Shown: piece by piece, positions 34,711 through 55,929 of the stretch
How the letters are laid out: each line of letters starts with the position of its first letter
How positions within the stretch are numbered: the stretch's first letter is position 1
NCBI GenBank assembly: GCA_002269645.1
Contig: NIVC01004034.1
Span: 1-63,637 of the forward strand
DNA length: 63,637 bases
DNA from: Macrostomum lignano
Lineage: Eukaryota
Direction of reading: 5' to 3'
The notes under the pieces: generated by a model
Seen by the model: only the letters and a program-made list of their open reading frames with translations
Told to the model about the DNA's origin: nothing
Databases searched by the model: none
Program-made: the position numbers and the translations under genes

Positions 34711-36881
34711 AAACGCGGAGCTGGTGGGGTCGGAGCGGACGGCCCAGTCAGGAGCTCCCGGGGGCGGCCCCCGGTTGCTTTCAGCGCCGTCGAAACGCTG
34801 GCAGCGGGCGAGCTGGGCGCGCTGCTTGACGGTGGCGAAGCGGGCATAGAAGGTGTCATCCAGGCGGCGCTTGATGTCGGCGACGGCGGCGGATTCCCAC
34901 ACCAGGCTGCGCACCCGCAGATTCGCCTGCTCGTCCTCGGCCTCACCGCTGCCTGAGGCGGTCTCGTCTTCCTCGTCTGAGGAGGTGAAATCCCGGGACA
35001 GCACGGCGCGGAACTGGTTGAGCTCGTCTGGGGACAGGTGCGGCAGCAGAGACTCGAATGCCTTCTGGCGCCGGCCGAGCTTCTGCGATGCGATGGGGAT
35101 TGGCGATTCTCACTAGGTGTACGGGGCGATTCTCACTTGGTGTACGGGGCGATTCTCACTAGGTGTACGGGGCGATTCTCACTTGGTGTACGGGGCAATT
35201 CTCACTTGGTGTACGGGGCGATTCTCACTAGGTGTACGGGGCGATTCTCACTAGGTGTACGGGGCGATTCTCACTAGGTGTACGGGGCGATTCTCACTAG
35301 GTGTACGGGGCGATTCTCACTAGGTGTACGGGGCGATTCTCACTAGGTGTACGGGGCGATTCTTGCTAGGTGCACGGGCGATTCTCAATTGGTGTAGGGG
35401 GGGGGGGGCGATTTTTACTCAGTTAATGGGGGCTAATTCTGGCTAGCACCACGGTTACGGACACAAATGAGAATCTGTATTCCAAAAAGCCTCACCGCCT
35501 TCATCCGGTTGCAGCGGGCGGCAGTCCGCCTGTTGCACTGGACCCGCTTGCTCTCCCGCAGGTAGTACTGGTACAGCTCTGCGGGCGGCATTCCGGTTTG
35601 ACTATGACTGACTCGAGAGTCGCGCAAGCAATGCAGCAACAAAGACTGGCTAAAGACTCACTTTTCCAGGTGTCCTCGTCGGCCTCGATGCCAGATTCAT
35701 CCCTCACCAAGTCCAAGACGCTGCGAGCCGCGTCCTGATTGATCGAGTGCTCCCAGCTGAGGGCGGCAAGGGAAAGCGGCTTGCAGGGCTTGGGGAGGTG
35801 GCTGAGTGAGCACTGATTGAGTAGCCAACTAGGCGCGCACCCTACCTCTTGGAGAAGTCGAACAAGTGAGGACCGCTGCCTCGGAGCTTCTTGTAAGCAT
35901 CTTGCAGTATGTTCTGTGGGCAAATTTCTGCTTCTGCTTGATTTCATTCAACTGAAACTCTCAAACTAGAGTGCCCAGACACAGACTAGAGTGCTCAGAC
36001 ACTAATGAGTGCACAGACTAACGAGTGCCCAGACACAGACTACAGTGCTCAGACACTAACGAGTGCCCAGACAATGATTAGAGTGCTCAGACACTAACGA
36101 GTGCCCAGACAATGATTAGAGTGCTCAGACACTAACGAGTGCCCAGACAGACTACAGTGCTCAGACACTGAGTGCCCAGGCACAGACTAGAGTGCTCAGA
36201 CACTTAACGAGTGCCCAGGCACAGACTAGAGTGCTCAGACACTAACGAGTGCCCAGACACAGACTAGAGTGCTCAGACTAGCCAGGCCAGCAGGCTCACC
36301 CGAACGTTGCCGCTCCAGCAGTTGTTGGCAGAGCTGGAAAATTCTCCGCCGCTGCAGCTCAAGATTGATGGACAGCCGGCAGTTCGGTGCGCGGCAGACT
36401 CCGAATCGTCAACGAGCGCCGCTTCATCGTCAGCTGCCTCGTTGAAGTTGTCGGCGGAGTTGACTTGGTGGACGAGAATGCCGCAGCCGCCGCCGCCAGC
36501 CTCGCCGTTAGTGTCAGCCAAGCGAACCTTGGACTCGCGGAATTCTTCAGCAGAATGTTGCAGAGGCCGCTTCCGATCTGCTGGGATCTGCGGCTCAGAC
36601 TCCTGCGCAGACGGCTGCTGCACAGGCAGCGGCAGCGGCGCCGCCTCGGCCAGTCGGTGCTCGGCGCGGACGAGCCGGAGCTGCACATCGGCGGCCGAGG
36701 GCTGCATGATGTCCACCAGCTGCAGGTGCAGGTTGTTGATGAGGCGCAGCGCGGCGCACAGGTCGTCCAGAGTCATGCTGTCCAGCAGCATGCCCGCGTT
36801 CATCAGGGTGGACTCGAACAGGGTCAGCGTAGAGAAAGCCGGCTGCTGCTGCTGCTGGTGCTGAAGGACGGCGGCGGCCAT
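34708..36881 (-). CDS. C14orf93-like putative nuclear protein, gene B (single exon at the position of gene A's array)
   Basis: Phase-consistent exons 36881-36300 (ends phase 0), 35913-35846 (0 to 2), 35756-35662 (2 to 1), 35578-35496 (1 to 0) and 35082-34708. Reads ...DAYKKLRGSGPHLFDFSKSWEHSINQ...TWKKLYQYYLRESKR...KA|KLGRRQK...DFTSSDEE...VRSLVWES...IKRRLD...GPPPGAPDWA. Confidence 0.8.
35100..35395. repeat. 23-bp minisatellite (ggcgattctcactaggtgtacgg)
   Basis: Tandem periodicity in the last intron of gene B. Confidence 0.95.
35965..36280. repeat. ~38-bp dimeric minisatellite (actagagtgctcagacactaacgagtgcccagacacag)
   Basis: Alternating gagtgctcagac / gagtgcccagac half-units in intron 1 of gene B. 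Confidence 0.9.
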
Positions 36882-37930: not shown

Positions 37931-38222
37931 GATGAGGACATTAGAAGGGGGAATGAGGGGTTGGGGAAGTGAAGAGAGATGAGCAAATGAGGGGATAAGG
38001 AAAAAGGGATGGGGAAATGAAGAGCGATGGGGAAATAAGGGGATGGGGAAATGAAAAGATGGGGGATCAGGGGATGGAGAAAAAGAAGGATGGGAAATGA
38101 AATGGGGAAATAAGGGGATGGGGAAATAAGATGGGGAAATGAGGAGATGGGGAAGGTGGGAAAATACGGAGGGGTAGGGAAGGAGTCAAGTCAGTTCTCC
38201 GCAGTCCTTGGCGCCGTCTCAG

Positions 38223-41200
38223 TTATTGAGTGGCGCCGCCAGGCGGATGAGACGCCGTCCAGGCTGGGTCGCGCGCCCAGTCGAGCTGGTCGGCGGGAGG
38301 CGGGCGGCTGGACAGCACAGCTGGGTCCCGCTGCAGCCGCAAAACGTCCGCACGCTGCTTGTCGTCGGCGAGGCGTTCGAGGAAAACTTCGTCTAATCGA
38401 CGCTTCATCTCGCGCAGCTCGGCGCTCTCCCAAGGGAGGCTGCGCACCTTCATCTCAGAGTCCAAGTCGGCACCGCCTTCTTCATCCGAGCTGGTGTAGT
38501 CCCTGTTGAGCACGCTCTCGTATTTTGTCTGGGCGGTCTGGTCGAGGTTGGGCTTCAGGGCCTCGTAGCTCTTCTGGCGCCGGTTCAGCTTCTGCGGGGG
38601 GACCGGCGGGTCAGGATGGGATTCTCGGGCTGGACGAGATGGGATTCTGGGGCTGGATGAGATGGGATTCTCGGGCCGGATGAGATGGAATTCTGGGGCT
38701 GGATGAGATGGAATTCTCGGGCTGGACGAGATGGGATTCTCGGACTGGATGAGATGGGATTCTGGGGCTGATGGGATGGGGATTCTCAGGTAGGTGAGAT
38801 GGGATTCTCGGGGTGATGGGATGGAGTTTCTCAAATAGGTGAGATGGGATTCTCAGGGTGATGGGATGGGGATTCTCAGGTAGATGAGATGGGATGGGAT
38901 TCTCAGGTAGATGGGATGGGATTCTCGGGCTGGTGGGATGGGGATTTACTAAATTAGAAGCCAGTTACCAAGAGTTCTCGGCAGAACGCGGATAGAGCAG
39001 CCGGGAGAGTCGTACAATAGACTTACCCTCGGCAGTTCAAACAAGGAAAATAGCTTTAGCAGCAGACACAACTGAACCAGACAAATCAGGCTCTCACCCC
39101 TGCTCAGACAGTGCGAATGCTCACTGCTATTCATCACCACAACACAGCGCAAAGCCAAGTCCGCACTCACAGTTTGCACAAGAAAGATTGAGTTCAGCTT
39201 GCTCTGCTGCTGCTGCTGTTTAAAATCCCGCTTGAGATTCTTATTAAACCAGCTGCCAAGGTACTTGAATCCGGCCTCTATAAAGAATTGCTAACACAGA
39301 ATTAGCCTAGACAAGCGCAGTGAGAGCTGCCTTTCCGAGAGTTGCTGGGCCGATCAGCTCTAACAAACAAATCAGGAAACGCACTAACTGACCAGGCTAA
39401 TCCGAACAATGCTTCGAGTGTCCGACTGCCGCTTGTTGACCTTAAATGCGCACTGCAGATTCTTGCGATAATGCCCGCCAAAGTACTTTAGCGACTGGGC
39501 TGCAGGGGCGGGGAAGGAGTTTCTTAGCAGTGATTTTCTCAACCAAGTGCAAGGGGAAGCATTGCAGGCGCCCGAGCCCCAACTGGCAGGGGAGGCGCAA
39601 CTTACTATAAGACTGAGCACCGTGTGCCGACACTGCTGGCTGCGCTCTGAGCTGACATATTTAAACTTTAGGTACCTGCGATAGTAGGAGCTAAGGTAGG
39701 CGGAGCAGCCTCCTGCAACAACAGGCAGTTCAGGGTCAGTCAGCCCCCTAACAAACAATGGAGCAACAAAAATTGGCTGGGACGTTGCAGAGAGCCGGCG
39801 GCAGAATGGAGGGACACAGCCTGGTCTGCCAATGCCCGCTTCACTCAATATGCTATGCACATTGTTGATATCGATCGCCCCTCAAACCCTATCATTCCAG
39901 ACCCGTGCTGCTTACCCCACTCTCATCATCGCCTCCTATCCACAAAACCCGCCGAATTTTCCGAGCCCCTATTGCCCTGTCTAGAATCAAATGTACTATT
40001 ATCACACTCTGCCAGACACCAGCTGCTGAACTCTTCGCTTTACGAAGTGCCAGACATGCTCGATGGGGTTCGTGTCTGGAGACTTTGACGTTCCTGTCCC
40101 TGAAGCCGCACTTTGCGCAGCCTTCGCCCATTTCTCAATCACCGATGGAATGCAAAACTTTTGGCCCTTGTGGCAGCGTGAGTGGGGGGGGGGGTGGTTA
40201 GCTGTTGCTGAGTATGCATCTTGTGAGCCAGACACGGTAGGGTTTGGCTACACGGGGCGCAGACACGTACCCAGATTCGATGGAAGCTATTCTTTAGATA
40301 ATCCTGCCTATAATCGCGCCGCAATACGCAGCGGAAATAGCCCGAGTAGTAACTCAGCGCCCGCTCTGCAACAATACACATTATATGCATGGAATTGTGC
40401 ATCTTCAAAAACTCGCCAATCGGGCTAACGTAGCGGGCAGGTGCTGGGCGCTGATCAGCTGCGCACACCTACCAGGACGCGGTGGAACACTTTGTCGCAT
40501 ATGCGCTGCTGGTGCTGCACTTTATAATCTCGTTTGAGCACAGCGCTAAAGTACACTTTAAAGTATTTTTCGGCTACAACTGGAAGTGCAAAAACAATTG
40601 AATTGCGGAGCGGACACAGAAATTGCTGGGGATTCGCTGCGGGCATTCCAGGCCTGGGAGCAAGTGCTGGTCACCAAAAGCTAAGCCTTACTGAGCCCAG
40701 GTATTTGAAGCGATCCATCCGCTGCTGCAGCTGCGCCTGCTCAAGGAGCTTCTTGGCCGATGGCTTCAGCGTCCAAGAGAAATAGGTGCTCAGGTAGCTG
40801 TAGCAGAGCCCTGCAAAGCAGCCCGACCCCCCGAAGTGTTGCAGGGCTGCTACACAATTTCTACCCTAGACTGAGGTGCAAAGGGCGTTGCCAGGGGACA
40901 GGAGACGAGGTCGGCAGGCTGTAGGTCTTACCAAGCTGAAAAGGAATTGCCTCTTCCAGCGAGAGGCCATGTGCAGCTTCTTGACGCCGGGCTTCAGCGT
41001 GCAGCCGAAGTACACGGACATGTACCGGTTGCAGCCGCCTGAAACAGCGCCGGATGGCCAGCTGCGAGTCTCTGGTGATGAGTGCGAATTCCCCTGCCAG
41101 CTGAGCGAGAATTCCCCTGCCAGCTGAGCGAGAATTCCCCTGCCAGCAAAGCGAGAATTCCCCTGCCAGCTGAGCGAGAATTCCCCTGCCAGCAAAGCGA

Positions 41201-42973
41201 GAATTCCCCTGCCAGCTGAGCGAGAATCCCCCCGTTGCTTAGCGGAGGGTTTTTGGGAAGCGGCGACGCTGAATAGGCATTAATAAATTATGATAATTAG
41301 TTGATTAGGTTGTCATACAAGGAGAGCATTGGTGCAGCGGGGGCGGCCCCCGATACCCCCCGATTTGCAACGGGGCCGATTATTATTATTACTATAGTTA
41401 TATTTTAAAGCTCCACAGCGCGGCAGCTGCACGGCTCAGCCAATATCGCAGCATTTTTTTATTTCGGACCAATAACTTTAAATATTTGCACAACTCATCA
41501 GGCCCTGCAACGCCCTTTTTTGTAGTCTGTTTTATAGTGAAATTAAATTCGATAATGCACAGACAATCACATGCTAATATGCAATGAGACCGCTGGGGAG
41601 GCACACTTCAGGCCAATGTAGTGATCAATGGATCATTGGGCACAAGTGCAATAATAAAGGCATTTAATATTTGCAGTATGCATTATTCAAATAGTTTGAT
41701 TTTAATTCCAAATTTAGATAATCTCTTTATGGTGGCAATATACCGCCAACAGTGTGCCAACCCGCCGCTCCCAGATATAAGCGTACTACTAGCAGTAGCC
41801 TACACAGAATATGACAGGAAATGACTTGAAAGACCCACTTCTCCAGGCGGACAGGTTCGCGGGCTGGTATTGGCTGAGGCTGAGCGCTCGGTCGATCACG
41901 CGGTTGGCGGCCAGGACGTTGACGCGGGCGGAGTAGGGCAGGGAGAAGTCGAACACGTTGGTGCCAGTCTCGTCCTTCAGCACTCGGTAGGCCTTGCGCA
42001 GCGTGGCCTTCCAGTCGTTGGACAGCTCGCCGGAGTCGGACAGGTCGGAGCCGCCGCCGCCGCCGCCACCGCCGCCTGGGCCGAGACGGGGCAGCTTGGC
42101 GGGCGGGCTCTGGCCGAAGGCAGCGGCGCCAGCACCGGAGCCGTCGTACACCAGATCCGCCTCCATCAGGACGCAGTCGTCGTCGGAATCGGCGCCCGGC
42201 TCCGACTTGACACCGGAGAAGGACGGCTCCGGCTTGCCCAGCTTCGACGTGCCCGGAGCTCCGGCGGCAGCGGCAGCGGCAGCAGCGGCGGCCACACCGG
42301 CCAGGCCGCCAGAGCCGCTTGTTGATCGCGAGGCGGGCGGCGGGCACTGCGAGGGATGGCGAGGGAAGCCATGGGCTGGTTTCCTGCTGTTTGGGCCTGG
42401 GCGATTCCAAAGGGGTGGTGCAGGGGCAGAGGCGATTCCATAGGGGTGGTGCAGGGGCAGAGGCGATTCCAAAGGGGTGGTGCAGGGGCAGAGGCGATTC
42501 CAAAGGGGTGGTGCAGGGGCAGAGGCGATTCCATAGGGGTGGTGCAGGGGCAGAGGCGATTCCATAGGGGTGGTGCAGGGGCGATTCCATAGGGATAGTG
42601 CAGGGGCGATTCCATAAGGGTGGTGCAGGGGTGATTCCATAGGGGTGGATCACGGTCAGTATATCTTGGGCCAATCCCGAGGCGGTGGTCAAGGCGCAGT
42701 TTACAGGTGATCTATACTGCACTGGATTGAGCTTACCTGGCTGTGCTCATCAGCCACAGTAGCCAGCCGCTGCACAGTGGGGTCCAGCACCTCCAGCAGG
42801 TGGCCGTGCAGCTGGGCCACAATCTTGAACGCCATGAGCAGGTCTCGCACTGCCATGCTGTCAATGAGCATGGTGGCGCTGCTGATGGTGCACTCAAACA
42901 TGGTCAGCGGAGAGAAGCTGCCGCCGCCCTGGCCGCCGGCCGGGGTAGGCGGAAATCCCATAGCGATTGACAT
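38223..42973 (-). CDS. C14orf93-like putative nuclear protein, gene A, with a seven-exon mutually exclusive cassette array
   Basis: Constant exons 42973-42737 (ends phase 0), 42346-41839 (0 to 1; ends AWR a|gtgggt) and 38591-38223 (cgcag|KLNRRQK...DYTSSDEE...VRSLPWES...MKRRLD...SSRPPP...WA*). Only a phase 1-to-0 exon joins them in frame, and seven are present. Confidence 0.85.
38610..38945. repeat. ~23-bp minisatellite (gggctggatgagatgggattctc)
   Basis: Tandem units just upstream (- strand) of the terminal exon acceptor. Confidence 0.9.
39171..39277 (-). CDS. Gene A cassette exon V7 (107 nt)
   Basis: ctttatag|ag...act|gtgagt; (K)AGFKYLGSWFNKNLKRDFKQQQQQSKLNSIFLVQT. Confidence 0.8.
39393..39499 (-). 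CDS. Gene A cassette exon V6 (107 nt)
   Basis: cccctgcag|cc...ctg|gtcagt; (T)QSLKYFGGHYRKNLQCAFKVNKRQSDTRSIVRISL. Confidence 0.75.
39606..39712 (-). CDS. Gene A cassette exon V5 (107 nt)
   Basis: tgttgcag|ga...ata|gtaagt; (R)GCSAYLSSYYRRYLKFKYVSSERSQQCRHTVLSLI. Confidence 0.8.
40000..40150 (-). mobile_element. Tc1 transposase fragment inside the exon array
   Basis: SPDTNPIEHVWHFVKRRV matches the Tc1 SPDLNPIExxW motif. Confidence 0.7.
40271..40365 (-). CDS. Gene A cassette exon V4 (95 nt)
   Basis: tgttgcag|ag...tgg|gtacgt; (K)RALSYYSGYFRCVLRRDYRQDYLKNSFHRIW. Confidence 0.8.
40473..40579 (-). CDS. Gene A cassette exon V3 (107 nt)
   Basis: cacttccag|tt...ctg|gtaggt; (I)VAEKYFKVYFSAVLKRDYKVQHQQRICDKVFHRVL. 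Confidence 0.8.
40692..40810 (-). CDS. Gene A cassette exon V2 (119 nt)
   Basis: ctttgcag|gg...tca|gtaagg; (R)LCYSYLSTYFSWTLKPSAKKLLEQAQLQQRMDRFKYLGS. Confidence 0.8.
40932..41038 (-). CDS. Gene A cassette exon V1 (107 nt)
   Basis: tgtttcag|gc...ttg|gtaaga; (S)GCNRYMSVYFGCTLKPGVKKLHMASRWKRQFLFSL; very high GC3. Confidence 0.8.
41083..41232. repeat. 23-bp minisatellite (ctgagcgagaattcccctgccag)
   Basis: About 6 units in the intron preceding V1. Confidence 0.95.
42400..42650. repeat. 31-bp minisatellite (gattccataggggtggtgcaggggcagaggc)
   Basis: Tandem units in intron 1 of gene A. Confidence 0.95.
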
Positions 42974-43484
42974 GACGGAGATTTAGGCTGGTTGGATGGC
43001 GGAGGCCGCGAGGCTGCACTGCAAACGTGGCGGTGGGTTTGGAAGGGGCTGCCTTGGTGACTGAACTCTGTGCATGCTCAAGCCTTCACTAGATGGCTAG
43101 TCTCTAAACACAAGGTGCTGAATACTAGCTAAGCATGAGACAACTTTAGCTATTTATATAGTAGTCTAACCAACAGCATAGAATTGGGTAGTGGTACTGA
43201 GATATCCAGATATGAAACTATTTGATACTTGGCCGCATTGTGCATTTAACCCTAAGCAGGGGAGGGAAGCGCCCTTCTCGATTCCGCTTTATAAGTGCCA
43301 ATGTAATTTGGGAGTCGATCCAAAGCTTAAACACAATGGATTATATAAGATGGCCATCATGCTAGCAGTTCTTCATGCTAGCGTTACTTCCGTGAGTGAC
43401 GGATGGCAGAAAGGCAACCTACTTAAGAAGCAGATTGCGGAGTGACAGCTTTCATACTAGTAGCTGACAACTTCCTTGCTGGGT

Positions 43485-46285: not shown

Positions 46286-48103
46286 TTAAAACCGAAAAGG
46301 ACGAGGTGGAGGTGCCGACTGTCCAAATCTGGAATTCGCCGGAGGCTGCAGCAGGCCCTGGTTGCTTACAGGCCTAGGAGTTCCAAAGGGTCTGATGCCT
46401 GGGCCGGCTGGCGCTGGATTGGCGTAGGGCTGGCCAAATTGCGGCCCGGGAGCAGAGCGGCCAGTCTGCTGTGAGTACTCCGGACCTCTGCTCATGTCGG
46501 ACCTATCAGCGCTGCCGGATTCAAACGAAGCATTGCGCCCGGGAACGTAGCCGCGGCCCACAGGTTGCATGGGTTCATCCATGCGCGGTCGTTTTATTTC
46601 GCCACCATGGGCGCTGTTCGAATCTAAGGAATTCCTTTTCCCAAAAGCAGCGTTCTGCTGTTGCTGCTGCTGTAGTTGAACGTCAGGTACGTTTCGTGAC
46701 TGACGCGGAAAAGTTGAATGCTGCTGGCCAATATTTGAAAAACCTGGAGCAGGCGCTCTTGAGGCTGGTGACGCAAAAGGGTTGCTTAGCTGCTGAGCAG
46801 ATCCAGCAATACCAATGGATGGCGTCGAACCGTATGGACGAACCTGCTTTTGCTGCTGGCCAGCTTGAGGCATGGACTGCTGCGGAGGATTGCTGGGAGT
46901 TGCAAAGCGAGGACCAGCTGACTGAGCAGGCGTGCTTGACTGAGGCTGAGTCGGTTTAGTGAAGTCGCTAGCAAACAAGCTCGGAATGTCTCCTTGCGAC
47001 CGATTTCCATGCCTAGCAGAGCCTCTTGCTGACGGACCAACTGATTTCTGATTCGATCCCGATCCAAAAGATGAGCTAGTGCTCTGTTTGGAATTTTGCA
47101 CATTGCCAGAAGCCTTGTTACCGGAGAAACTACCGGCTGGACTACCAGCAACATTCCTTTGCGTAGGAGTGGTTGAAGCACTCTTAGAGACAGGGGCATT
47201 CTTGTTTGCTGGACTAGCTTTGCTAGCCGAGCTGGGTGCGGCTGCAGAGCCAGACTGGGCCGCTTTGCTGCCAGCCGTTGCTGAGCTAGATGCGTCAGCA
47301 TTAGCTGCGTTGCTAGCTGCAGGTTGCTGCCCTTTGCCTAATAGCAGCGCCCCGCCAAGCAGCAAGTCCTTCTGCTTCATCCAGGGGAACATGCTGATAG
47401 GAATGAAAGTGGCGCCATCGTTCGCATCCCAGTACTTTTTGAAGTAAGAGTTGGCAATGCCAGAATTCAGTTCCCAAGAAACTGACAATGGTCGAGTTTT
47501 TGGAACGCCAGAAATAGCCTTGAATGCTTCAGATCGGCTCTTAAATGTTACTGCTGCTGTGTTTAAGAACGCCTTATAGTCGATGCGGGTCACTGTGCCA
47601 AATTCTTCTGCTCTCTCCTTCACCTTCTTTTCGCTCCAAAACTTTGGTATCTGCTTTATCATGATGGAGGTACTGCAAACAGCCACGTGACCATCTCTGG
47701 GCTTCGGGAGACCAAGCTCTTCAACGCTAGAGTCCCCAGACTTGCTTACGCCATTAGCTGCGTCTTTCGAAGCTGGGGTCCCCTGGGCGGTGGATGAACT
47801 TTGCTCGGCCTGCTTTGCTACTGGCTGCTTAGAGGACGAATCACTAGATGACTGTTGCTGTGATTGACTCTTAGCGTCAGGGGCGGTGGTTTCAGGCTTC
47901 TCAGCAGCTGTCGCTGAGGTGTCTTCACTACTAGCTTGGGCCATTTGAGCCCCCATCTGTCTAAAGGCATACTCATTCACGGTGCTAAAAAACTGATTAA
48001 CTTCTTTTAAGCCTGTAACTAAGGCATCGCCCTTAGATGACTTAATGCACTCAAGAACCTGGCTCAGAAGAGTTGGGATTTTTGTCGAATTGTCCGCTGC
48101 CAT
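46286..48103 (-). CDS. Intronless SCAF4/SCAF8-type RRM protein lacking a recognisable CID domain
   Basis: 605-aa ORF. STSIMIKQI...EEFGTV...AAVTF...EAFKAI...SVSWELNSGI...KKYWDANDGATFIP matches the SCAF4/8 RRM and its WD..G.T.IP extension; low-complexity S/Q/P tail; tttcag acceptor 4 nt before the ATG. Confidence 0.8.
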   Translation of the reverse strand: MAADNSTKIPTLLSQVLECIKSSKGDALVTGLKEVNQFFSTVNEYAFRQMGAQMAQASSEDTSATAAEKPETTAPDAKSQSQQQSSSDSSSKQPVAKQAEQSSSTAQGTPASKDAANGVSKSGDSSVEELGLPKPRDGHVAVCSTSIMIKQIPKFWSEKKVKERAEEFGTVTRIDYKAFLNTAAVTFKSRSEAFKAISGVPKTRPLSVSWELNSGIANSYFKKYWDANDGATFIPISMFPWMKQKDLLLGGALLLGKGQQPAASNAANADASSSATAGSKAAQSGSAAAPSSASKASPANKNAPVSKSASTTPTQRNVAGSPAGSFSGNKASGNVQNSKQSTSSSFGSGSNQKSVGPSARGSARHGNRSQGDIPSLFASDFTKPTQPQSSTPAQSAGPRFATPSNPPQQSMPQAGQQQKQVRPYGSTPSIGIAGSAQQLSNPFASPASRAPAPGFSNIGQQHSTFPRQSRNVPDVQLQQQQQQNAAFGKRNSLDSNSAHGGEIKRPRMDEPMQPVGRGYVPGRNASFESGSADRSDMSRGPEYSQQTGRSAPGPQFGQPYANPAPAGPGIRPFGTPRPVSNQGLLQPPANSRFGQSAPPPRPFRF

Positions 48104-49199
48104 GGGCTGAAATAAAGCAAGAAGGAAAAACTACTTTACTAAACTACTAACACATTATTTTAAACCCACTCCAGACCTAATGGATTACAATGATGCTTGC
48201 AATAGAATACAAATAAATTTCATAGACTAACTTCCTGGCCAATGAAAACAAAAGAAAATTAACTATAAAATTACACCCTTTCTTTCCAAATTTATTGCTG
48301 CATCTCAAGTTGAAGGCTTCAGTTTTTTGTAGGAAGGCAATCTAAATTTGAAAGAAAAAACTATATGCTTAATCATCTATTCGGGTCTCTTACAATCTTA
48401 GCCTCTCAAAGTAAGAAATTTCATCACCAATGATTACACTTTTAACAAGAGATTGGGGAATTAATGCAAGTTATTTCAACCCTATGTACTTTATAAAGCA
48501 ATCATACACTTTTGTAACTTAAAGTATATTTTTTCAAGATTCATTAATTTTTAGAAGATAGATTTTTAGTATATAGAGGTACATTTTACTTTTTGCTTTT
48601 GCTTTATAACCCTTAGATTGTGCATATTTGGGCATATTATAAAGGCTTGTCAATTTTTGCATGTAAAACAGACATAACCAAATGATGTCTCATTTAGAAG
48701 AGCATATCTCTCCAAACAAAACTATTTTTAAGTCTAATAAATGCTTCCAATCACTGCAATGCTGCTGAAATGAGTTCCACTAGCTGTGACAATCTGAAAC
48801 ACTATTAGAAGCTTGGCTTTATAGAATTTATGTAGCTTATGTAGTTTAGACCTTGGCTGCAATAGTGCTCTACAAGACAATACAATTGACTATTAATTTA
48901 TTGTCACTTTTCAAACTTTAATTTATAAATAAATAAGCTGTAAGACATACAGATTTTGAACTTGTGGAATTCCAATCCCTGGAAGTATTTTAGCATACAT
49001 TCTTAAATTTGAAGTCTTACTCAAACAAAAACTTATTAATAAAGTTAGGATAAGGTTTGAAAAAATAATGAATTTGTGCTAAAATAAAAATTTTAGGCAA
49101 GCATTGATCTTATCAGCTGGGATACCACATAGAATGAGTCTCTAAATGTGTCTATCTAAAGCAAATGTTGGCAAACTCTGGCTTTTGACTCTTTCTGTC

Positions 49200-49650
49200 T
49201 ATCTAGTTCTTTGAAACTTCTCTTCTCTCTCCTTTGTTTTCTTATCTCATCTATCATGTTGCCTTTTTTCTCTTCTTTCTTCTTTTCTCTCTTATCCTTC
49301 CTTTTTTATCTCATCTCAGAAGAGGTCATCTTTGCCTTTTCCTATCTACTCATTTTTCCCTCTCCTTTCTTCTCTCTTTTTCTTCTTTCTTTTCTTCCCT
49401 CTTCTTATATATATATATATTCCTTTATCTCCCTTCACTTTTATCTCTATTCTCATTTTTTTCTCTTTTCTCCTCTCTTCCCTCTCGTATCTTACCTTAT
49501 CTCTTCTCTTATCTCATCTCTCTCATCTTGCTTCTCCTCTCCCCTTCTTCTCCCTCCCTTTCTCTCATTGTCCTCACCCCCTTATTTCTCTTATCTTCTC
49601 TCTCTCTTTGAATCATCTATTCTTTTTTCTTTCTGTTCATCTATTTTTTA
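49200..49650. repeat. CT-rich low-complexity tract
   Basis: Polypyrimidine run; source of spurious F/S/L ORFs. Confidence 0.9.
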
Positions 49651-50899
49651 GCCATGAGCTAGATTCTTTAACTGGCCTTTGAGGTAAAAGTCTGCCTATC
49701 TCTGGTTGGAAAGCCAGTTTGTAGGACCTAGTACTCTCATGGTTGTTTTCATACTTTGATTATGTCATCTTTCTTGCCAATTTTTCTTGCCTTGAAAGGA
49801 ATTTGTGTATTTTCAGCTCCACTGCAGTCTGCATCAGTCTAACAAACAAGGAAATGCACATTTCTTAAGAGGCCATTCAAGTTTTTAAGTACCTTTAAGA
49901 GAAACTTAAAATTTCCATGGTATGACTAATTTAATAGGGTGGTATTGCATTGCATTGCCTTTTTATAAATATTTTGCTTTTACAAACCATGCTAAATTTC
50001 CTTGATTTGCAAAGTTTAATTGCTGCGGAGTTTACCTATAGAAGGCAATGGTTAGATTTTTCTCACTAAATAATTATGGCTCAATAGCCTCTCCATGAGG
50101 TGCATAGGCTATAAATAAAGTTATTCTAGAACATTCTACATTTGATATATATATTCAGCACTATGGCCTAACCCTTGGTCTGGCTTTAGGGGAATAAGTG
50201 GATGGCACAAACAACAGAAAAAGCAGACTAACTTAAAATGCTTATAGTTTCTATTCTGATTGAGTTACAAAGTTGAAACTTTACATTTAGACAAAGAATG
50301 TCAATGAAAAATTGTGAAGTTTGAAGTCTATTCTTTTATATGGAGCAAACTTGTAGCAGCCAAAAGTTAGCCAATTTTACAACCTTTTTTATACACCTAG
50401 GCCTAGATTGGAAAAGAGGCAAGTGGGCAAAGGTTGGGATGGTAGCTTTGCTAACAAAAAACAGCTAAGTTTTTGCACTACTAGGTAGGAAGACTTAATT
50501 TAGGAAATTTTACTAGCTATTTAGCCCCTTTCTAGGTGGCTTTTTAGCATTTAAGCATTGGTCTATAAGCAGTTTTATATAGTTGCTAAACAAATGACAC
50601 TAATCTCCAAGCAGTTCTGCAATAGCAAATCTTTAAGCAATTTATACTGAGACTAAAAAAATCTTAGAGGTATATTTTCAATGTTTATAACTTTGAAATG
50701 TAAATTAATTTATAGTTGTCTTATTGTTATTGATATTCTTTGTATAAGTTAGTCTAATTATGTATTATTATTAGTATTAAATTATTAGTTTTATGTATTA
50801 TATTACATTTTGCAATAATTGACAATAAACCTAGCACAAGGATTACTATTAGAGTTGCTTTACTCTCCCCAGTTTAGTACCACTGCTATCCTGATTAGT

Positions 50900-51190
50900 A
50901 CCACTCCTTCAGATAAGCTCTACTCCTTTAGATTAGCTCCATTCCTTCAGATGAGTTCTATTCCCCTAGATTAGCTCCACTTTTTTGGATTAGCTCTATT
51001 CCTTTAGATTAGTTCCACTCTTTCATATTAGTTCCACCCCTTCAGATTATTTCCACCCCCAGATTAGCTCCACTCCTTTAGATTAGCTCCACTCCTTTAG
51101 ATTAGCTCCACTCCTTTAGATTAGCTCTACTCCTTTAGATTAGCTCCACTCCTTTAGATTAGCTCCACTTTTTCAAATTAGCTCTATTCC
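50900..51190. repeat. 19-bp minisatellite (agattagctccactccttt)
   Basis: Tandem periodicity, degenerate at the edges. Confidence 0.9.
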
Positions 51191-54100
51191 CAAACTGCCA
51201 TTAGGCTATTATTATTGCCTCAGAAGTTGAAATTAACCAACCCTCAATTTGCAATTATCCCCACTGCAGCCTAAAATTATCCCCTTTAATCCCCTATAAT
51301 AGACTATAAACATACTCTTAGAAGCCTGCAATCATCTTCTTTTTAGTCTACAACTTTCATTAGCATTAAGTCTTTATCCCCTTAGTGGCCTAGAATTGTT
51401 CCTACAGCAAACTAAAAAATTTGTTTTGTAGTTGGCAGTTATCCTCCTAACTTGCATTTAATCCTCTATAGTTAAAAAATCCTTCAAAACTCTATAGTTA
51501 TTTATCCTCCACAGAAGTCTACCATTATCCTTTAAGTAGTCTGCAGTTACCTTTCCTCTAGCAGTTTGTAGCAATATATTCATAAATCTGGAAGTAGTCT
51601 CATTTATCTTTTTAGCAATCTGCTTAGCAGCAATTTCCTATAACATAGCATTTAGCAATGCCTTCAGCAGTTTAGCAGCAATTTTATACTTTCATAGAGC
51701 TAGGCAATACCCATTGATGTGATCAGTAATAATTAAGGTAGTTTTTTACAAATATAATTTTGCTTAGCAACTTGTGGCAATTAGCCAAAATAATTCATAA
51801 ACTCTGCTTAGCTAATTAATCAAAAAATGTTTCAGTTGGTTGAGGCATGAATAAATTCAATTTTAATTATCTACTAGAGTCAGGACTTGAACCTGGAACA
51901 TTTTGCTTAGCCTAATGCCTATAGTGCAGCTACTCTGCCTATTGATGGGAAGGAGATAAAATCAGCCATATATGCTTTGGCACTGCAATAAAATACATAA
52001 CAGTGATAGGCTGTTCAGTGTGCAAACAGAGCCAATGTACAGTTGCGTGAAATCTATAAATAGCTAAGAATTATCAATGTAGTCCATCAATTAATCAGGG
52101 TTAGAATATACACACAGCCACTGAGCATTATTTACCCTTGCACATGGCAGCTAGTTTTGAGGCCTATACTACATAGTAAAAAGAAAAGTTATGGCACAAT
52201 CTCAATTGGGATTGAATTCAGTCAGTCAAGATTTTGACCTTTTCTAGCTGCCTATTGAAAGCATTGGGAAAATTCATTTTTCAAATATTTAACCAAATAT
52301 TTATATTTATATTTAAAATATTTAAAATATCTTCCCATTTAGATTTTTCAATGCAATTTGATCTACACAATTTCATAGGAATTTGCAATTAAATAAAGCA
52401 AGTTTAAAAAAATTGGTTTAGGCATTCAGGCTATAGACTGAAATACTAGTCAGACAGACATAGCTTAGAGATTTAGTATATTGATGAATGATGATGAAGG
52501 TAGCCTATAACACATTCTGTGGTGAATTTAGAATGGATACAAAATTTGGTTGAACAGTTTGAGAGTCTATAGCAAAGTAATTTCTACATAGATAGACAGA
52601 CAGTAAACATGGATTTTTAGTTTTTTTAGGTATAGATAGATTAATATATTTCTAATTCTTTAAAGAGAGCCTAAAAATGCCTAACATGAGGCAAAGTATA
52701 TTGCTTATTAGAAGATGTTAATGCTTGCATTTTTACTACGCTTTAAGTAAATATAAATACAAAAGTTATAATAAACCTAAACTCTAAAATAAAAAAGTAT
52801 TAGCTATTAAATTTCATTTTAAGCTACACTAAAAAAACAACTAAGATATTTACAATTTAGAATAGGATAGGATTTAGACTAAGGAAGTCTAGAGTAGGGA
52901 GAAATGAAAAACTTTGGTGAGTTTATCTTATTTTTTGAAAACATTTCTTCAAGATAAACAGTATAAAGCTTTAAAATATTATATAAATATACATATTTTT
53001 ACTTTTAAAACTTATATACTAAGTATCAAATATAATAAATTATGAATATAAAAATATAGAAATAACTTAATTCATGAACCAAAATATATATATTTTTACA
53101 AGCTGTTGAAACCCGCTGATTTTGAACCCGGGGAACTCTATTCCCCAGAATTATTTTTTGCATGTATTCTAAAATCTGAGGTCAAACTCAAACAAAAACT
53201 TGTTTATAGTTAGGACAGAGTTAAACATAAAATAGAGTACATTCGTGTAAAATTAGGATTTGAGGCAAACATTTGTATTGTTGGCTGGAGTGCTGCATAG
53301 AATGTCAGGCAAACTTTAGTCTCTGCCTCTCCCTGTCCCTTGGATCCTTTGGAGCCCACGGGCAGAGGTTAGGGTGGCTATTTTTACAAACTGGCTGCAG
53401 CCCTAGTCAGAGTGGCCAAAGAAGATTGTTGTGGGTTAAAAAAAGCAGTTTTCTGCTTTTTTAGGGATGTTAAAATGTGAAAATTAAAAATTAAAATAGC
53501 CTAAAGCCTGCTCCGGAAAATTTGCAGTTTTCCCATATAAGTTTTGATGCTGACTTGGCAGAATTGTAGGAGTTCACTTGCTACATACATACAGACAGAC
53601 AAACATCGCGTCAGTTTTAGTATTAGGAGAGTTGAAATATTTGATAATTAATTTGGCTTTTTTAAAATATATAGTCAAATTTGATTTATTCAAAATTTAT
53701 TTCATTTTATTTCATTTAAAAATTTCAAATTTCAAGATTGCAATTACAAAGAATCTAGCAAATAGTTATCTAATAATTGTTAGGCCTATTATTTTATTAG
53801 ATTTACTTTTTTCAATATAAGTATATAGTTCTTGGTTTGCTTTGCCATTAGAAAAAGCCTAGGTTAGTTATAATAAAACTAAAATAAAATTGGTGGTTAT
53901 CTAATTTATCTTGCTTTTAATATAGTATAGGGCTTATTATATTATATGTTATAAGTTATATTATATTATATTATAATTATAGTGATGAATATAGAGATAT
54001 CAATAGACAGCAAAGAAATTTATTTTATTTTTAATAACACAATCAATATTTATAACATCATTATATAATCATAATTAGAATTACTTTACTATATATATTT

Positions 54101-55929
54101 CTACTATCAGTTCCAACTATCTACCAATATAGACAAAAAACAACTTTAATACAGTATTTAATATATTTAGACTATTATTTTAATTTAGGACTTTTCATAT
54201 TAACTTTATTTTATATAATATAGGCCTATTATAGAATTTTAAAGTTTTATTATAAAGATATTCAATTTATTTACTGCTTTACTACTATAGCCTATAGACC
54301 TAAACTATATTATAGCCAATGGCCATTATTATAAACTATGTTTAATGAAAATTGCAAATTGGTTATCAGCAATCTAATATTTTTATAAATAATGTGTTAC
54401 ATAAGAAAAAACTTAAAAAAGGGTATCTGGCATAGTTTTAACCTTGGCTATAATAGAGTAGAGAACCTTAATTTTTATGCATGTTTATATTTAATTTTTT
54501 ATTTGTTTTTCAAAAATGTTCACTTTTGATTAGTTCATTATTATTATTATCTTAATTAATTGTTAATAAATTTTTAACATTTATTTTTATTAAAGTTATA
54601 CATATGATTTAATAGCTTTTTCAATATAACATAGTTACTTGATATAAGGAATATTAGTAATATTAAAACCTTATCTCTTATTATACACCAAGACTAAAAC
54701 AAGAAATATAATAATAAAAATATTATTAAATTTACACCTTTATACCTATACATATAACTTAGGGCTATATTATTCCAAATTTAGCCACTAGTATCCTAAC
54801 AACACAATATATATAAGGCATTGCTCAATTTTAAGGGACTAAAGAGCTCCCCTTGCATTAGTTATCTGTTACTGAAGAACCTGTTACCAAAAGCAAAATG
54901 ACCTGCAACTGCAATTATTTGCTTTTGCACTTGCCTTATAGTACAGAGTTACAGAATACTTTCTTTTAAAATAATGAAAATTATATACTGTGCTTATACA
55001 TGAAATTAATAATTACTACTAATAAGTTATGATCAAATGAATCATTACTTAGGGCCTAGGCCTACATTACAAAAAAGAAACGTCACTGCAAATGTTTGAA
55101 TATAGCTTTCTGCAAAATCAGTTTATTAGGCCTATTAAATCCAAAAGTGATGTAACTTTTCGCAAACATTCAAACATCGATACATATATTTTTAGAGTAA
55201 GTGAACGACGTAACCAGTTTCCATCCAACAAAATACGCGGGAGTAGTCACCCTATAGCGTAAGCTAGAATGATACAACTAAATAAAAAACACCAATTGAA
55301 TTAGTTCGTGAATAGTGGACAGCAAGCACTACAAATTTTTGTCGTTAAAACAAACTATACTAACAATGCGAATTAATCAGCCACCATACAATATTTGTAA
55401 TAGGTTATAAATATTAAAATCAGTACTTTTTATTTTTTATACTTTAATAACATTGGCACATTACCGTTAACGATCCTAAAAGAGTTGTCCACCTAACGAT
55501 AACGTATTAGTATAAGTCTGACTGAGTATATCCGTACTGCACTGTGCGGAATAGGACGACTTAAGTATAGTTTATTAAGTGGTTTTTCTTAAGTATAGCC
55601 CTTGTGGAACGATCCTGAATATTTTTGCGGGTTGGCCAACCTTAAGACAAATTGAATTTCATGTGTCTATTACTAAGCGCCCTCTAAAAATATTTATCAT
55701 CATAGCTCGTATCAACTAAATAATAAAGTTCTTTGTTAAAATGCTAAAATGATGTAGCGAAAAATTGCCCGCAATGCTCTCTTTGCTCACCTCTGGATCC
55801 GCCACTGTGACCGCGCAGGCAAACTTTTTTGTGGTCTTATGCAATATTGTTAATCCCTTAAAAACAAAAACAACATGGACTAACCAATTGATATAGGATG
55901 CTGTCAAAAAGAACAGCGAGTCCGCGAGG

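What the first reader, a model, noticed from the sequence alone, without database searches (positions are those of the whole stretch)
38223..42346. The variable exon replaces the predicted recognition helix of a C14orf93-like domain
The spliced product reads ...KAYRVL...FDFSLPYSARVN...W-[cassette]-KLNRRQK...DYTSSDEE...VRSLPWES...RRLD...SSRPPP. From recall, this parallels the C-terminal domain of vertebrate C14orf93 (...KGACVAYFLTKRREY...RSRRYRLF...ELMSDEED...RPPRFR...LD...PSDRLP). V5 (RGCSAYLSSYYRRY) maps onto the GACVAYF helix. The Tyr/Lys/Arg-rich cassettes, NLS-like PAKLPRL and the SUMO-consensus VKSE suggest a nuclear nucleic-acid binder whose specificity is switched by splicing. DNA binding is an inference; the family is poorly characterised.
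Basis: partly seen in the sequence, partly recalled or inferred. Interest (0 to 1): 0.85.

Follow-up and report, generated by a model that had tools for sequence, protein, structure and literature searches.

The report
Seven-way exon switch, C14orf93-like gene
A flatworm (Macrostomum lignano) gene, distantly related to the poorly understood human gene C14orf93, carries seven tandem copies of one small ancient exon, only one of which can be spliced in at a time, so it can make up to seven proteins differing in a 32-40-residue, strongly basic stretch of one long helix; what that helix binds is unknown.

Summary
On the minus strand, exon 2 (42346-41839) ends in phase 1. Seven paralogous cassettes (V1-V7, 41038-39171) follow, all AG|..|GT and all 3n+2 nt, then a phase-0 last exon (38591-38223).

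Only the V7 isoform is publicly annotated (PAA93852.1). V1-V6 are nevertheless conserved like coding exons against a second copy of the locus: 2 synonymous changes in 642 nt versus 2.3 % in introns.

The C14orf93 link is real but remote:
- No isoform hits Pfam DUF4616.
- The flatworm family joins a bilaterian invertebrate family (hhalign 100 %), which matches C14orf93 at 95-97 % probability.
- Shark C14orf93 and an amphioxus relative carry the homologous segment on one exon with the same phases (113 and 110 nt).

'Recognition helix' and DNA binding are not supported. A confident AlphaFold model (pLDDT 93.5) puts the cassette in the middle of a 56-residue helix, with no significant PDB match (Zeste Myb/SANT prob 0.09).

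Most likely this is a mutually exclusive exon array that swaps a basic surface or NLS-like segment of a nuclear protein. It is a new member of a known kind.

The parts
42737..42973 (-). Exon 1 coding part (MSIAMGF...ADEHSQ), N-terminal helical region conserved among flatworm paralogues; donor |gtaagc
   Evidence: identical to residues 1-79 of PAA93852.1 (P0171)
41839..42346 (-). Exon 2 (508 nt, ends in phase 1): low-complexity linker, psiKxE site VKSE, acidic-hydrophobic SIM-like DSDDDCVLME, PAKLPRL, then helices 1-2 of the conserved domain up to ...ANLSAWR
   Evidence: 0 differences in 508 nt versus the second copy L006
40932..41038 (-). Cassette V1, 107 nt (3n+2): SGCNRYMSVYFGCTLKPGVKKLHMASRWKRQFLFSL ('TLKP' type)
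   Evidence: 1 synonymous difference versus L006
40692..40810 (-). Cassette V2, 119 nt (3n+2): RLCYSYLSTYFSWTLKPSAKKLLEQAQLQQRMDRFKYLGS
40473..40579 (-). Cassette V3, 107 nt with acceptor ccag| at 40579 (alternative acceptor tag| gives 40573, 101 nt; both 3n+2): (IV)AEKYFKVYFSAVLKRDYKVQHQQRICDKVFHRVL
   Evidence: 1 synonymous difference versus L006
40271..40365 (-). Cassette V4, 95 nt (3n+2): KRALSYYSGYFRCVLRRDYRQDYLKNSFHRIW
39606..39712 (-).
39393..39499 (-). Cassette V6, 107 nt (3n+2): TQSLKYFGGHYRKNLQCAFKVNKRQSDTRSIVRISL; orthologous cassette in paralogous locus L002:13784-13890
   Evidence: pN 0.30 with saturated synonymous sites versus the L002 cassette
39171..39277 (-). Cassette V7, 107 nt (3n+2): KAGFKYLGSWFNKNLKRDFKQQQQQSKLNSIFLVQT; the only cassette used in a public gene model
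   Evidence: PAA93852.1 = V7 isoform
38223..38591 (-). Last exon coding part (starts phase 0): KLNRRQK...YTSSDEE...VRSLPWESAELREMKRRLD...SSRPPP...stop; the most widely conserved part of the domain
   Evidence: 0 differences in 369 nt versus L006
41039..41838 (-). 800-nt intron between exon 2 and V1, with a 23-nt minisatellite (41079-41232)
38592..39170 (-). 579-nt intron between V7 and the last exon, with a 23-nt minisatellite (38615-38942)

Best explanation
This locus is a Macrostomum lignano gene (Mlig034464; the V7 isoform is PAA93852.1). It encodes a member of an unnamed, bilaterian-wide helical domain family whose divergent vertebrate representative is the C-terminal half of C14orf93/RTFC (Pfam DUF4616).

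One ancient small exon has been tandemly duplicated to seven copies here. That exon has phase 1 in, ~110 nt (3n+2), phase 0 out, and is present as a single constitutive exon in shark C14orf93 and in amphioxus. Because every copy is 3n+2 nt between a phase-1 donor and a phase-0 acceptor, only inclusion of exactly one copy keeps the conserved last exon in frame. The array therefore behaves as a mutually exclusive exon cluster that can yield up to seven isoforms.

The cassette encodes residues 71-106 of the domain, which is the middle of one 56-residue helix. All cassettes keep a hydrophobic/aromatic stripe (Y76, Y/H/W80, F/Y81, L85, then 98, 101/102, 105/106) and basic positions 75, 86 and 90. 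They differ almost everywhere else, above all at 91-97, while all stay at net +5 to +7.

The most likely effect (inferred) is that splicing keeps the fold and swaps an exposed, basic surface of a nuclear protein. That surface would be a partner-, nucleic-acid- or import/sub-nuclear-targeting surface, so each isoform has a different target.

Shown: exon anatomy, frame logic, constraint on V1-V6, homology, exon conservation, helix location.
Inferred: that V1-V6 are spliced into mRNA, nuclear localisation, and what the surface binds.
For: Anatomy and frame logic:
- Seven AG|..|GT cassettes, all 3n+2.
- All 21 pairwise double inclusions give a stop inside the second cassette, and skipping frameshifts the last exon.

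Cassettes are real coding exons:
- HMM E 1e-12 to 2e-16, with only these seven hits in the window.
- Against a 98.2 %-identical second copy (L006), introns differ at 69/2992, constant exons at 0/1114, and V1-V6 at 2/642, both synonymous (Poisson P 4.7e-5).
- The V6-type cassette is conserved in a paralogue despite saturated synonymous sites (pN 0.30, 57 % aa identity).
- Arrays of 3, 5 and >=6-7 cassettes with shared cassette types occur in three paralogous loci.
- In L001, two annotation sources use different cassettes of the same array.
- The V7 isoform equals PAA93852.1.

Homology:
- Exhaustive profile search returns 243 proteins. Named hits come from molluscs, a brachiopod, echinoderms, a hemichordate and amphioxus.
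- hhalign: flatworm vs invertebrates 100 %; invertebrates vs C14orf93 97.2 % (E 3e-11); cross-phylum vs C14orf93 95.4 %; reversed controls E 0.1-0.4.
- Identical intron phases and exon size in shark C14orf93 (113 nt) and amphioxus (110 nt), each with a single copy.

Structure:
- AF2 with a 76-sequence alignment gives pLDDT 93.5 and pTM 0.79, with the cassette inside H66-121.
- Amphipathic periodicity and a hypervariable 91-97 stretch.

Nuclear context:
- C14orf93 is nuclear in HEK293. It has a predicted bipartite NLS at residue 369 which, by my numbering, lies in the homologous exon (PMC10163356).
- It was recovered in an RNA-binding-protein screen (PMC5322522).
Against: - No transcript evidence was available for V1-V6. 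Exact look-ups of the six predicted isoforms find nothing in public protein sets.
- No docking-site/selector RNA pairing above shuffled controls. Exclusivity rests on frame logic alone, and its efficiency is unknown.
- Direct flatworm vs C14orf93 profile comparison is not significant (2-5 %), and no isoform reaches Pfam DUF4616. The homology is transitive.
- No structural neighbour indicates what the domain binds.
- I had no model coordinates, so the 'exposed face' is inferred from sequence periodicity only.
- C14orf93 is also reported as secreted (PMC10163356). The flatworm protein lacks that N-terminus, so function may not transfer.
Confidence: 0.72

Rival explanations
1. One reading: the domain is a helix-turn-helix or Myb/SANT-like DNA-binding domain, the cassette is its recognition helix, and splicing switches DNA-sequence specificity.
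For: - The cassettes are very basic and aromatic-rich.
- The first three helices have a faint Foldseek resemblance to the Zeste Myb/SANT-like DNA-binding domain (5cqq, TM 0.47-0.48 normalised to the 74-residue target).
- C14orf93 is nuclear and appeared in an RNA-binding screen.
Against: - The Foldseek hit has E 8.3 and probability 0.09, and no PDB or BFVD hit reaches E 0.001.
- No Myb, MADF, HTH or any other Pfam family is hit by 19 family members at E<=10.
- PDB sequence-profile searches are empty.
- The cassette is the middle of a 56-residue helix with hydrophobic contacts at both ends, unlike a short third helix of a three-helix bundle.
Confidence: 0.12
2. The cassette is mainly a targeting signal (bipartite NLS, nucleolar or other sub-nuclear signal). 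The isoforms differ in import efficiency or sub-nuclear address, not in ligand specificity.
For: - The homologous exon of C14orf93 (KRREYRNSLNPFKGLKEKEEKKLRSRRYR) coincides with the predicted bipartite NLS starting at residue 369, and the protein is nuclear but excluded from nucleoli (PMC10163356). The mapping comes, and the numbering offset is my inference.
- All cassettes keep K/R at positions 75, 86 and 90 and a net charge of +5 to +7.
Against: - The segment is predicted as a rigid, well-packed helix (pLDDT >90), whereas classical NLSs are usually disordered.
- A simple NLS would not need seven deeply diverged versions kept under selection in several paralogues.
Confidence: 0.2
3. Only V7 is functional. 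V1-V6 are unused relics of exon duplication (pseudo-exons), and the gene makes one protein.
For: - Only the V7 isoform is in public protein sets.
- No regulatory RNA pairing was found.
Against: - All six keep open frames, AG/GT sites and 3n+2 length despite only 12-38 % pairwise identity, i.e. they are old duplicates.
- They show 2/642 differences, both synonymous, versus 2.3 % in introns between two copies.
- V6-type and 'TLKP'-type cassettes are conserved in paralogous loci with saturated synonymous divergence.
- In paralogue L001, different gene models use different cassettes.
Confidence: 0.06
4. The C14orf93 resemblance is convergent. Both are basic/acidic low-complexity helical proteins, and the flatworm family is unrelated.
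For: - Direct flatworm vs C14orf93 hhalign is not significant.
- There is no DUF4616 HMM hit.
- Sequence identity in the alignments is only 16-20 %.
Against: - The alignments are colinear over ~175 columns and agree between two independent query profiles.
- Reversed-column controls score E 0.1-0.4 over <=34 columns.
- The same small exon with the same phases and nearly the same length occurs in flatworm, amphioxus and shark C14orf93.
- Shared motifs appear in the same order: Y-F in the small exon, SDEE, hydrophobic-x-S..L...LD, S-x-R-x-P.
Confidence: 0.07

Closest known systems
Vertebrate C14orf93 / RTFC / mouse 4931414P19Rik (Pfam PF15394, DUF4616), C-terminal half
   Same: - Remote but colinear homology of the whole ~200-residue domain, seen through an invertebrate bridge profile (hhalign 95-97 %).
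- Same order of motifs.
- The cassette-equivalent segment (GACVAYFLTKRREY...RSRRYR) lies on its own exon with phase 1 in, 3n+2 nt, phase 0 out (113 nt in shark vs 95-119 nt here).
- That segment is basic and NLS-like.
   Different: - The flatworm proteins do not reach the Pfam DUF4616 model.
- The N-terminal halves are unrelated. The flatworm protein has no Cys-rich, signal-peptide-like start. It has its own helical N-terminus plus psiKxE and SIM-like motifs.
- C14orf93 has one copy of the exon, whereas this gene has seven.
- The molecular function of C14orf93 is itself unknown. It is reported as nuclear, secreted, and a hit in an RNA-binding-protein screen.
Unnamed bilaterian family of 'uncharacterized proteins' (e.g. 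Branchiostoma XP_/CAH1250442, Lingula LOC106158935, Acanthaster LOC110985748, Apostichopus, Glandiceps LOC144453630, Potamilus, Gigantopelta)
   Same: - Clear homology over the full domain (HMMER E down to 1e-11; hhalign 100 %, E 4e-40).
- Same exon structure in amphioxus.
- This is the family the window gene actually belongs to.
   Different: - These genes have a single copy of the small exon where checked (amphioxus).
- The family has no Pfam model, no name and no literature.
Mutually exclusive exon clusters made by tandem exon duplication (e.g. insect Dscam1 exon 4/6/9 clusters, Mhc, 14-3-3zeta; vertebrate ion-channel and tropomyosin pairs; from established knowledge)
   Same: - A tandem row of homologous exons of the same phase and near-identical length sits between constant exons.
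- Each exon encodes the same structural element.
- Inclusion of two exons breaks the frame.
   Different: - No docking-site/selector complementarity was detectable.
- Inter-cassette introns of 106-121 nt are not obviously too short for splicing.
- The organism is a flatworm and the protein is uncharacterised.
- The array recurs in several paralogues (3-7 cassettes each).
- Isoform usage has not been shown.
Myb/SANT-like (MADF/Zeste-type) DNA-binding domains
   Same: Three N-terminal helices followed by a basic, aromatic-rich helix. There is a faint Foldseek hit to the Zeste DBD.
   Different: The hit is not significant (prob 0.09), there is no Pfam or PDB sequence-profile match, and helix 3 is 56 residues long and continues into a C-terminal sub-domain with two short strands.

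Membership tests
Pfam PF15394 DUF4616 (C14orf93 family) | Protein scores above the curated gathering threshold (27 bits) of the DUF4616 HMM | tested here: not met
   The model is in the library: C14orf93 bait scores 538 bits. There is no hit at E<=1 to 10 for window isoforms, flatworm paralogues or 19 cross-phylum members.
C14orf93 superfamily (remote homology) | Significant profile-profile match to an alignment of authentic C14orf93 orthologues over the whole domain | tested here: met
   - Cross-phylum profile including flatworm rows: 95.4 %, E 1.9e-8, 174 columns.
- Invertebrate-only profile: 97.2 %, E 2.8e-11.
- Flatworm vs invertebrate: 100 %, E 4e-40.
- Reversed controls: E 0.1-0.4.
- Flatworm-only vs C14orf93 alone is not significant (2-5 %), so the link is transitive.
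C14orf93 superfamily (remote homology) | Conserved gene structure: the YF-containing basic segment on its own exon, phase 1 in, 3n+2 nt, phase 0 out | tested here: met
   Shark C14orf93 L003:1484-1596 is 113 nt, amphioxus L004 ~5243-5352 is 110 nt, and the flatworm cassettes are 95-119 nt, all with the same phases.
C14orf93 superfamily (remote homology) | Same three-dimensional fold as C14orf93 | not testable with these tools
Mutually exclusive exon cluster | Two or more adjacent exons that are homologous, of similar length, and splice-phase compatible with the same flanking exons | tested here: met
   Seven cassettes, all 3n+2, with canonical splice sites and a shared Y76/F81/L85 scaffold.
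Mutually exclusive exon cluster | Inclusion of none or of more than one exon is non-productive | tested here: met
   All 21 pairs give a premature stop in the second cassette, and skipping frameshifts the last exon.
Mutually exclusive exon cluster | Transcripts show exactly one cassette per mRNA, with several cassettes used | not testable with these tools
   - No RNA-seq was accessible, and only the V7 isoform is annotated.
- Indirect support: V1-V6 are constrained like exons, and two gene models of paralogue L001 use different cassettes.
Mutually exclusive exon cluster (Dscam-type regulation) | A docking site complementary to selector sequences next to each cassette | tested here: not met
   - There is no shared intronic k-mer of 8 nt or more.
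- The longest complementary stems fall within the shuffled range, apart from one 16-bp match to an intronic minisatellite.
- This was a simple ungapped search, so a weak or gapped structure could have been missed.
HTH / Myb-SANT-like DNA-binding domain | Significant structural or profile match to a known HTH/Myb/SANT/MADF domain | tested here: not met
   - Foldseek best hit: Zeste DBD, E 8.3, prob 0.09.
- No Pfam Myb/MADF/HTH hit in 19 members at E<=10.
- No hit in the PDB profile search.
Pfam DUF4211 (UniRef label of paralogue P0002) | Match to the DUF4211 HMM | tested here: not met
   P0002 has no Pfam hit at E<=10. UniRef labels of the flatworm family members are mutually inconsistent.

The most novel reading that the evidence does not exclude
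The Macrostomum expansion of this family has at least 15 diverged paralogue clusters, at least four of which have their own arrays of 3-7 cassettes. It could be a combinatorial recognition system: a nuclear scaffold whose long basic helix is diversified both by gene duplication and by mutually exclusive splicing. That would give dozens of variant surfaces that each recognise a different nucleic-acid or chromatin target, for example different repeat or transposon families. In effect it would be a nuclear counterpart of Dscam-type isoform diversity, and it would give the first handle on the molecular function of human C14orf93.
Probability: 0.12. Interest if true: 0.85.

Novelty: new member of a known kind. 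Interest (0 to 1): 0.55.

Why it matters
- C14orf93/RTFC is a human gene linked to familial thyroid cancer and to cortical development. It has no recognised domain, and published InterPro and HHpred analyses found none (PMC10163356).
- This analysis shows that its C-terminal half belongs to an ancient bilaterian domain family with a confidently predicted fold that has no significant match among solved structures.
- The family has a conserved small exon encoding a basic helix segment, and a flatworm has turned that very exon into a seven-way splice switch in several paralogues.
- Evolution has thereby marked this segment as the functionally tunable part of the domain. That gives a concrete target for mutagenesis in C14orf93 and a natural allelic series (seven isoforms) for binding and localisation assays in a transgenic-tractable flatworm.
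- It also adds a multi-exon mutually exclusive cluster outside arthropods and vertebrates, and it flags wrong public gene models.

Tried and rejected
- Pfam and NCBIfam scans of isoforms, paralogues and cross-phylum members found no family, including DUF4616, DUF4211, Myb and MADF.
- PDB sequence-profile searches found only chance hits with E>0.05.
- Foldseek of the confident model against the PDB and BFVD found nothing with E<2.
- The first AF2 run with 5 sequences was poor (pLDDT 62) and was superseded by the 76-sequence run.
The V1 isoform and then the annotated V7 isoform were used instead, so per-isoform models could not be made.
- The word-indexed search with the cross-phylum profile did not reach C14orf93. 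I therefore used my recollection of the human C-terminus only as bait. It proved 100 % identical to chimpanzee C14orf93, and all tests used the retrieved database sequences.
- The docking/selector RNA search was negative: shared k-mers and the longest complementary stems did not exceed shuffled controls. An RNAduplex version timed out.
- dN/dS between the window and L002 cassettes could not be computed because synonymous sites are saturated. It was replaced by the comparison with the 98 % copy.
- UniRef names of flatworm relatives (Exo70, DUF4211, BEN, FHA, Rab-GAP, kinase, MADF-like) were rejected as unreliable, because none is reproduced by Pfam.
- Literature searches for DUF4616, Mlig034464, and Macrostomum with 'mutually exclusive' found nothing relevant.

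Full report
1. WHAT IS THERE

The window is eukaryotic, with introns and minisatellites. By near-identity to database proteins it comes from the flatworm Macrostomum lignano.

The feature lies on the minus strand. Translating that strand and reading the splice sites gives the following gene:
- Exon 1 coding part, 42973-42737 (MSIAMGF...ADEHSQ).
- Exon 2, 42346-41839, 508 nt, ending in phase 1 (...ANLSAWR plus one base).
- Seven short exons, V1 to V7, listed below.
- A last exon, 38591-38223, starting in phase 0 with KLNRRQK.

| Cassette | Coordinates | Length |
|---|---|---|
| V1 | 41038-40932 | 107 nt |
| V2 | 40810-40692 | 119 nt |
| V3 | 40579 or 40573-40473 | 107 or 101 nt |
| V4 | 40365-40271 | 95 nt |
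| V5 | 39712-39606 | 107 nt |
| V6 | 39499-39393 | 107 nt |
| V7 | 39277-39171 | 107 nt |

Every cassette has an AG acceptor with a pyrimidine tract, a GT donor, an open frame when read from phase 1, and a length of 3n+2.

A profile built from the cassettes finds exactly these seven places in all six frames of the 63.6-kb window, with E 1e-12 to 2e-16.

Joining exon 1, exon 2, V7 and the last exon gives, residue for residue, NCBI protein PAA93852.1 (BOX15_Mlig034464g3, 406 aa). Another public model of this locus (P0003) wrongly strings V1, part of V2 and V3 in series.

2. ARE V1-V6 REAL EXONS, AND IS THE ARRAY MUTUALLY EXCLUSIVE?

No RNA data could be queried. The six predicted isoforms with V1-V6 are not in public protein sets. 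The evidence is therefore indirect, but it is consistent.

(a) Frame logic. All 21 pairwise double inclusions create a stop inside the second cassette. Skipping all cassettes shifts the frame of the last exon. Only single inclusion yields the conserved C-terminus.

(b) Constraint. The public assembly holds a second copy or haplotype of the locus (L006) at 98.2 % identity. The differences are distributed as follows:

| Region | Differences |
|---|---|
| Introns | 69 of 2992 positions (2.31 %) |
| Constant exons | 0 of 1114 |
| V7 | 0 of 107 |
| V1-V6 | 2 of 642, both synonymous (TCT>TCG in V1, ATA>ATC in V3) |

At the intronic rate about 14.8 changes would be expected in V1-V6, giving Poisson P 4.7e-5.

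(c) Age. The cassettes share only 12-38 % identity, yet all have kept their frame, splice sites and length class.

(d) Paralogues. Three other M. lignano loci of the family carry their own arrays:
- L001 has at least 6-7 cassettes.
- L002 has 3.
- L005 has 5.

Cassette types are shared between loci: the 'TLKP' type like V1/V2, the 'YFGGHY' type like V6, and the '...SKLNS.F.VQT' type like V7. The V6-type pair between the window and L002 is 57 % identical in protein although synonymous sites are saturated (pN 0.30). In L001, two annotation sources use different cassettes of the same array (P0001 versus P0008/P0017). Neighbouring family genes have a single copy of the exon.

(e) Regulation. A search for a docking site and selector sequences of the insect type found nothing above shuffled controls. 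Inter-cassette introns are 106-121 nt, or 558 nt where a transposase remnant sits. The only exclusivity mechanism visible in the sequence is frame incompatibility, presumably with nonsense-mediated decay (inference).

3. IS THE DOMAIN C14orf93-LIKE?

Direct tests fail:
- No Pfam family, including PF15394 (DUF4616, the C14orf93 family), is hit by any isoform, flatworm paralogue or relative, even at E<=10.
- The model is present and works, because a C14orf93 sequence scores 538 bits against it.

An exhaustive profile search with flatworm sequences then found 243 proteins. Beyond many M. lignano paralogues they come from molluscs (Potamilus, Gigantopelta), a brachiopod (Lingula), echinoderms (Acanthaster, Apostichopus), a hemichordate (Glandiceps) and amphioxus. 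All are 'uncharacterized'.

They share, in order, the motifs below:
- a Y-F...L-K/R-D segment
- KL.RR..AL
- Y/F-x-SS-D/E-E
- VR.L.WES..L...K..LD
- S.RP.P...P.WA

To obtain authentic C14orf93 sequences I used my recollection of the human C-terminus only as bait. It was 100 % identical to chimpanzee C14orf93, and it retrieved named orthologues from mammals to hagfish.

Profile-profile comparisons:

| Query profile | Target | Probability | E-value | Columns |
|---|---|---|---|---|
| Cross-phylum (with flatworm rows) | C14orf93 | 95.4 % | 1.9e-8 | 174 |
| Invertebrates only | C14orf93 | 97.2 % | 2.8e-11 | 178 |
| Invertebrates without amphioxus | C14orf93 | 97.2 % | 3.4e-11 | 181 |
| Flatworm | Invertebrates | 100 % | 4e-40 | 204 |
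| Flatworm only | C14orf93 | 2-5 % | 0.007-0.025 | 22-157 |
| Column-reversed controls | C14orf93 | <=0.5 % | 0.1-0.4 | <=34 |

The flatworm-only comparison is not significant. With the wide 19-paralogue profile, however, it is colinear over 157 columns and gives the same residue mapping as the significant comparisons.

Gene structure provides independent confirmation:
- In the white-shark C14orf93 gene the upstream exon ends in phase 1 (...ELK G|gtaagt). A 113-nt exon encodes GACVAYFLTKRREYRNAMNPYKSLKEREDKKLRSRRYR, and the last exon starts in phase 0.
- In amphioxus the same exon is 110 nt (DAAVRYFRSQRDD...RQRLVQ), with the same phases.
- These match the flatworm cassette: phase 1 in, 3n+2 nt, phase 0 out.
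- Shark and amphioxus each have one copy.

The relationship is at superfamily level and is transitive. The flatworm array is a tandem multiplication of one ancient constitutive exon.

4. STRUCTURE, AND WHAT THE CASSETTE DOES

With a 76-sequence alignment AlphaFold2 gives a confident model of the V7-isoform domain, with mean pLDDT 93.5 and pTM 0.79. Its elements are:
- helices 11-28 and 42-58
- one very long helix, 66-121
- helix 124-133
- a short strand, 153-157
- helices 163-180 and 183-190
- a strand, 192-199

The cassette is residues 71-106, which is the centre of the 56-residue helix. It is not a separate short helix.

Across 13 cassettes the sequence pattern is as follows:
- Hydrophobic or aromatic positions 72/73, 76/77, 80/81, 85 and 89, then 98, 101/102 and 105/106, are conserved. 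Y76 and L85 are invariant.
- Basic positions 75, 86 and 90 are conserved.
- Positions 91-97 are polar and fully variable.
- All seven window cassettes carry net +5 to +7 (pI 9.8-10.6).

Foldseek finds no significant neighbour in the PDB or BFVD. The Zeste Myb/SANT-like DNA-binding domain appears at E 8.3 and probability 0.09, which is a lead only. Sequence-profile searches of the PDB are empty. The 'recognition helix', HTH or Myb fold, and DNA binding are therefore not supported by any test here.

What the data do support is that splicing preserves the packing stripe and exchanges the rest of a basic helical surface.

Context favours the nucleus:
- The psiKxE site (VKSE) and the following acidic-hydrophobic DSDDDCVLME motif recur in paralogues (and visual inspection). 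This is inference.
- C14orf93 is nuclear in HEK293. It has a predicted bipartite NLS at residue 369 which, by my mapping, lies in the homologous exon, and it was a hit in an RNA-binding-protein screen (PMC10163356, PMC5322522).
- C14orf93 is also reported to be secreted.

5. VERDICT

The locus is an unannotated seven-way mutually exclusive exon array in a flatworm member of an unnamed bilaterian domain family that includes C14orf93. Anatomy, constraint and homology are shown. Isoform usage and the biochemical role are inferred.

My estimates for the rival readings are:

| Reading | Probability |
|---|---|
| Cassette is a targeting-signal switch | ~0.2 |
| Cassette is a Myb/HTH recognition helix | ~0.12 |
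| V1-V6 are relic exons | ~0.06 |
| C14orf93 resemblance is convergent | ~0.07 |

The finding is a new member of a known kind, namely tandem-duplication MXE clusters. It also links C14orf93 to a wider family and points to its tunable segment. Interest is moderate, at 0.55.

Noticed in passing
window 34735-35916, minus strand: A second gene of the same domain family lies immediately downstream. Its exons read ...NILQDAYKKLRGSGPHLFDFSK, ...EHSINQDAARSVLDLV..., and KLGRRQKAFESLLPHLSPDELNQFRAVLSRDFTSSDEE... It resembles P0016 (405 aa). Family genes also sit in tandem in L002 and L005.
   Followed up: partly
window 40005-40247, minus-strand frame (intron between V4 and V5): A remnant of a Tc1/mariner-type transposase (...SPDTNPIEHVWHFVKRRV...; Pfam DDE_3, E 6.5e-4, below the gathering score). 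It explains why this inter-cassette intron is 558 nt instead of ~110 nt.
   Followed up: partly
window 37947-38154, 38615-38942, 41079-41232, 42400-42648: Four minisatellites (units of 16/29, 23, 23 and 31 nt) lie in the 3' flank and in three introns of the gene. The 41079-41232 repeat has a 16-bp complementarity to the V5-V6 intron, the only stem exceeding shuffled controls. The window and the public copy differ most in the 38615-38942 repeat.
   Followed up: partly
window 46289-48103, minus strand: A long single-exon ORF (605 aa from MAADNSTKIP...) lies upstream. It has a weak RRM_1 match (E 0.0015, below the gathering score) and a long Ser/Gln/Pro-rich tail. It is a separate gene of unknown identity.
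   Followed up: partly
window 48000-56000: An AT-rich block (GC 29-34 %) contrasts with 45-60 % GC elsewhere in the window.
   Followed up: no
window 40573-40579 and 40265-40271: V3 has two possible acceptors 6 nt apart (ccag| at 40579, tag| at 40573). V4 has two possible donors 6 nt apart (gtacgt after 40271, gtctgc after 40265). Each alternative keeps the 3n+2 length, so they would add or remove two residues in frame.
   Followed up: partly
L006 (GCA_002269645.1, NIVC01000020.1:1048648-1060067) versus window 38100-43100: The window is not identical to the public assembly copy. Identity is 98.2 %, with all coding exons identical apart from two synonymous sites. It is therefore another haplotype, a recent duplicate, or another assembly of the same gene.
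   Followed up: yes
Database entries P0002, P0003, P0006, P0008, P0014, P0017, P0020, P0156-P0158, P0161: UniRef names for M. lignano members of this family are mutually inconsistent: DUF4211, Exo70, Ras-GEF, Rab-GAP TBC, Rubis-subs-bind, protein kinase, MADF-like, FHA and BEN. Pfam scans of P0002, P0003, P0014 and P0020 gave no match; the other named entries were not scanned. These labels look unreliable. Model P0003 of this very locus joins cassettes in series.
   Followed up: yes
window V6 39393-39499 versus L002:13784-13890: Every synonymous site differs between these two orthologous cassettes (pS about 1.0), which is more than saturation alone predicts. It may reflect a strong shift in codon/GC usage between the two paralogous loci. 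This is unexplained.
   Followed up: no
one search hit list (P0042-P0150): Many ~90-150-aa database 'proteins' consist only of the last-exon part of the domain. They start a few residues before KL.RR (for example M..LQKL.RR..AL). This suggests that gene finders in many species start a model at this conserved phase-0 exon boundary and miss the upstream exons.
   Followed up: no
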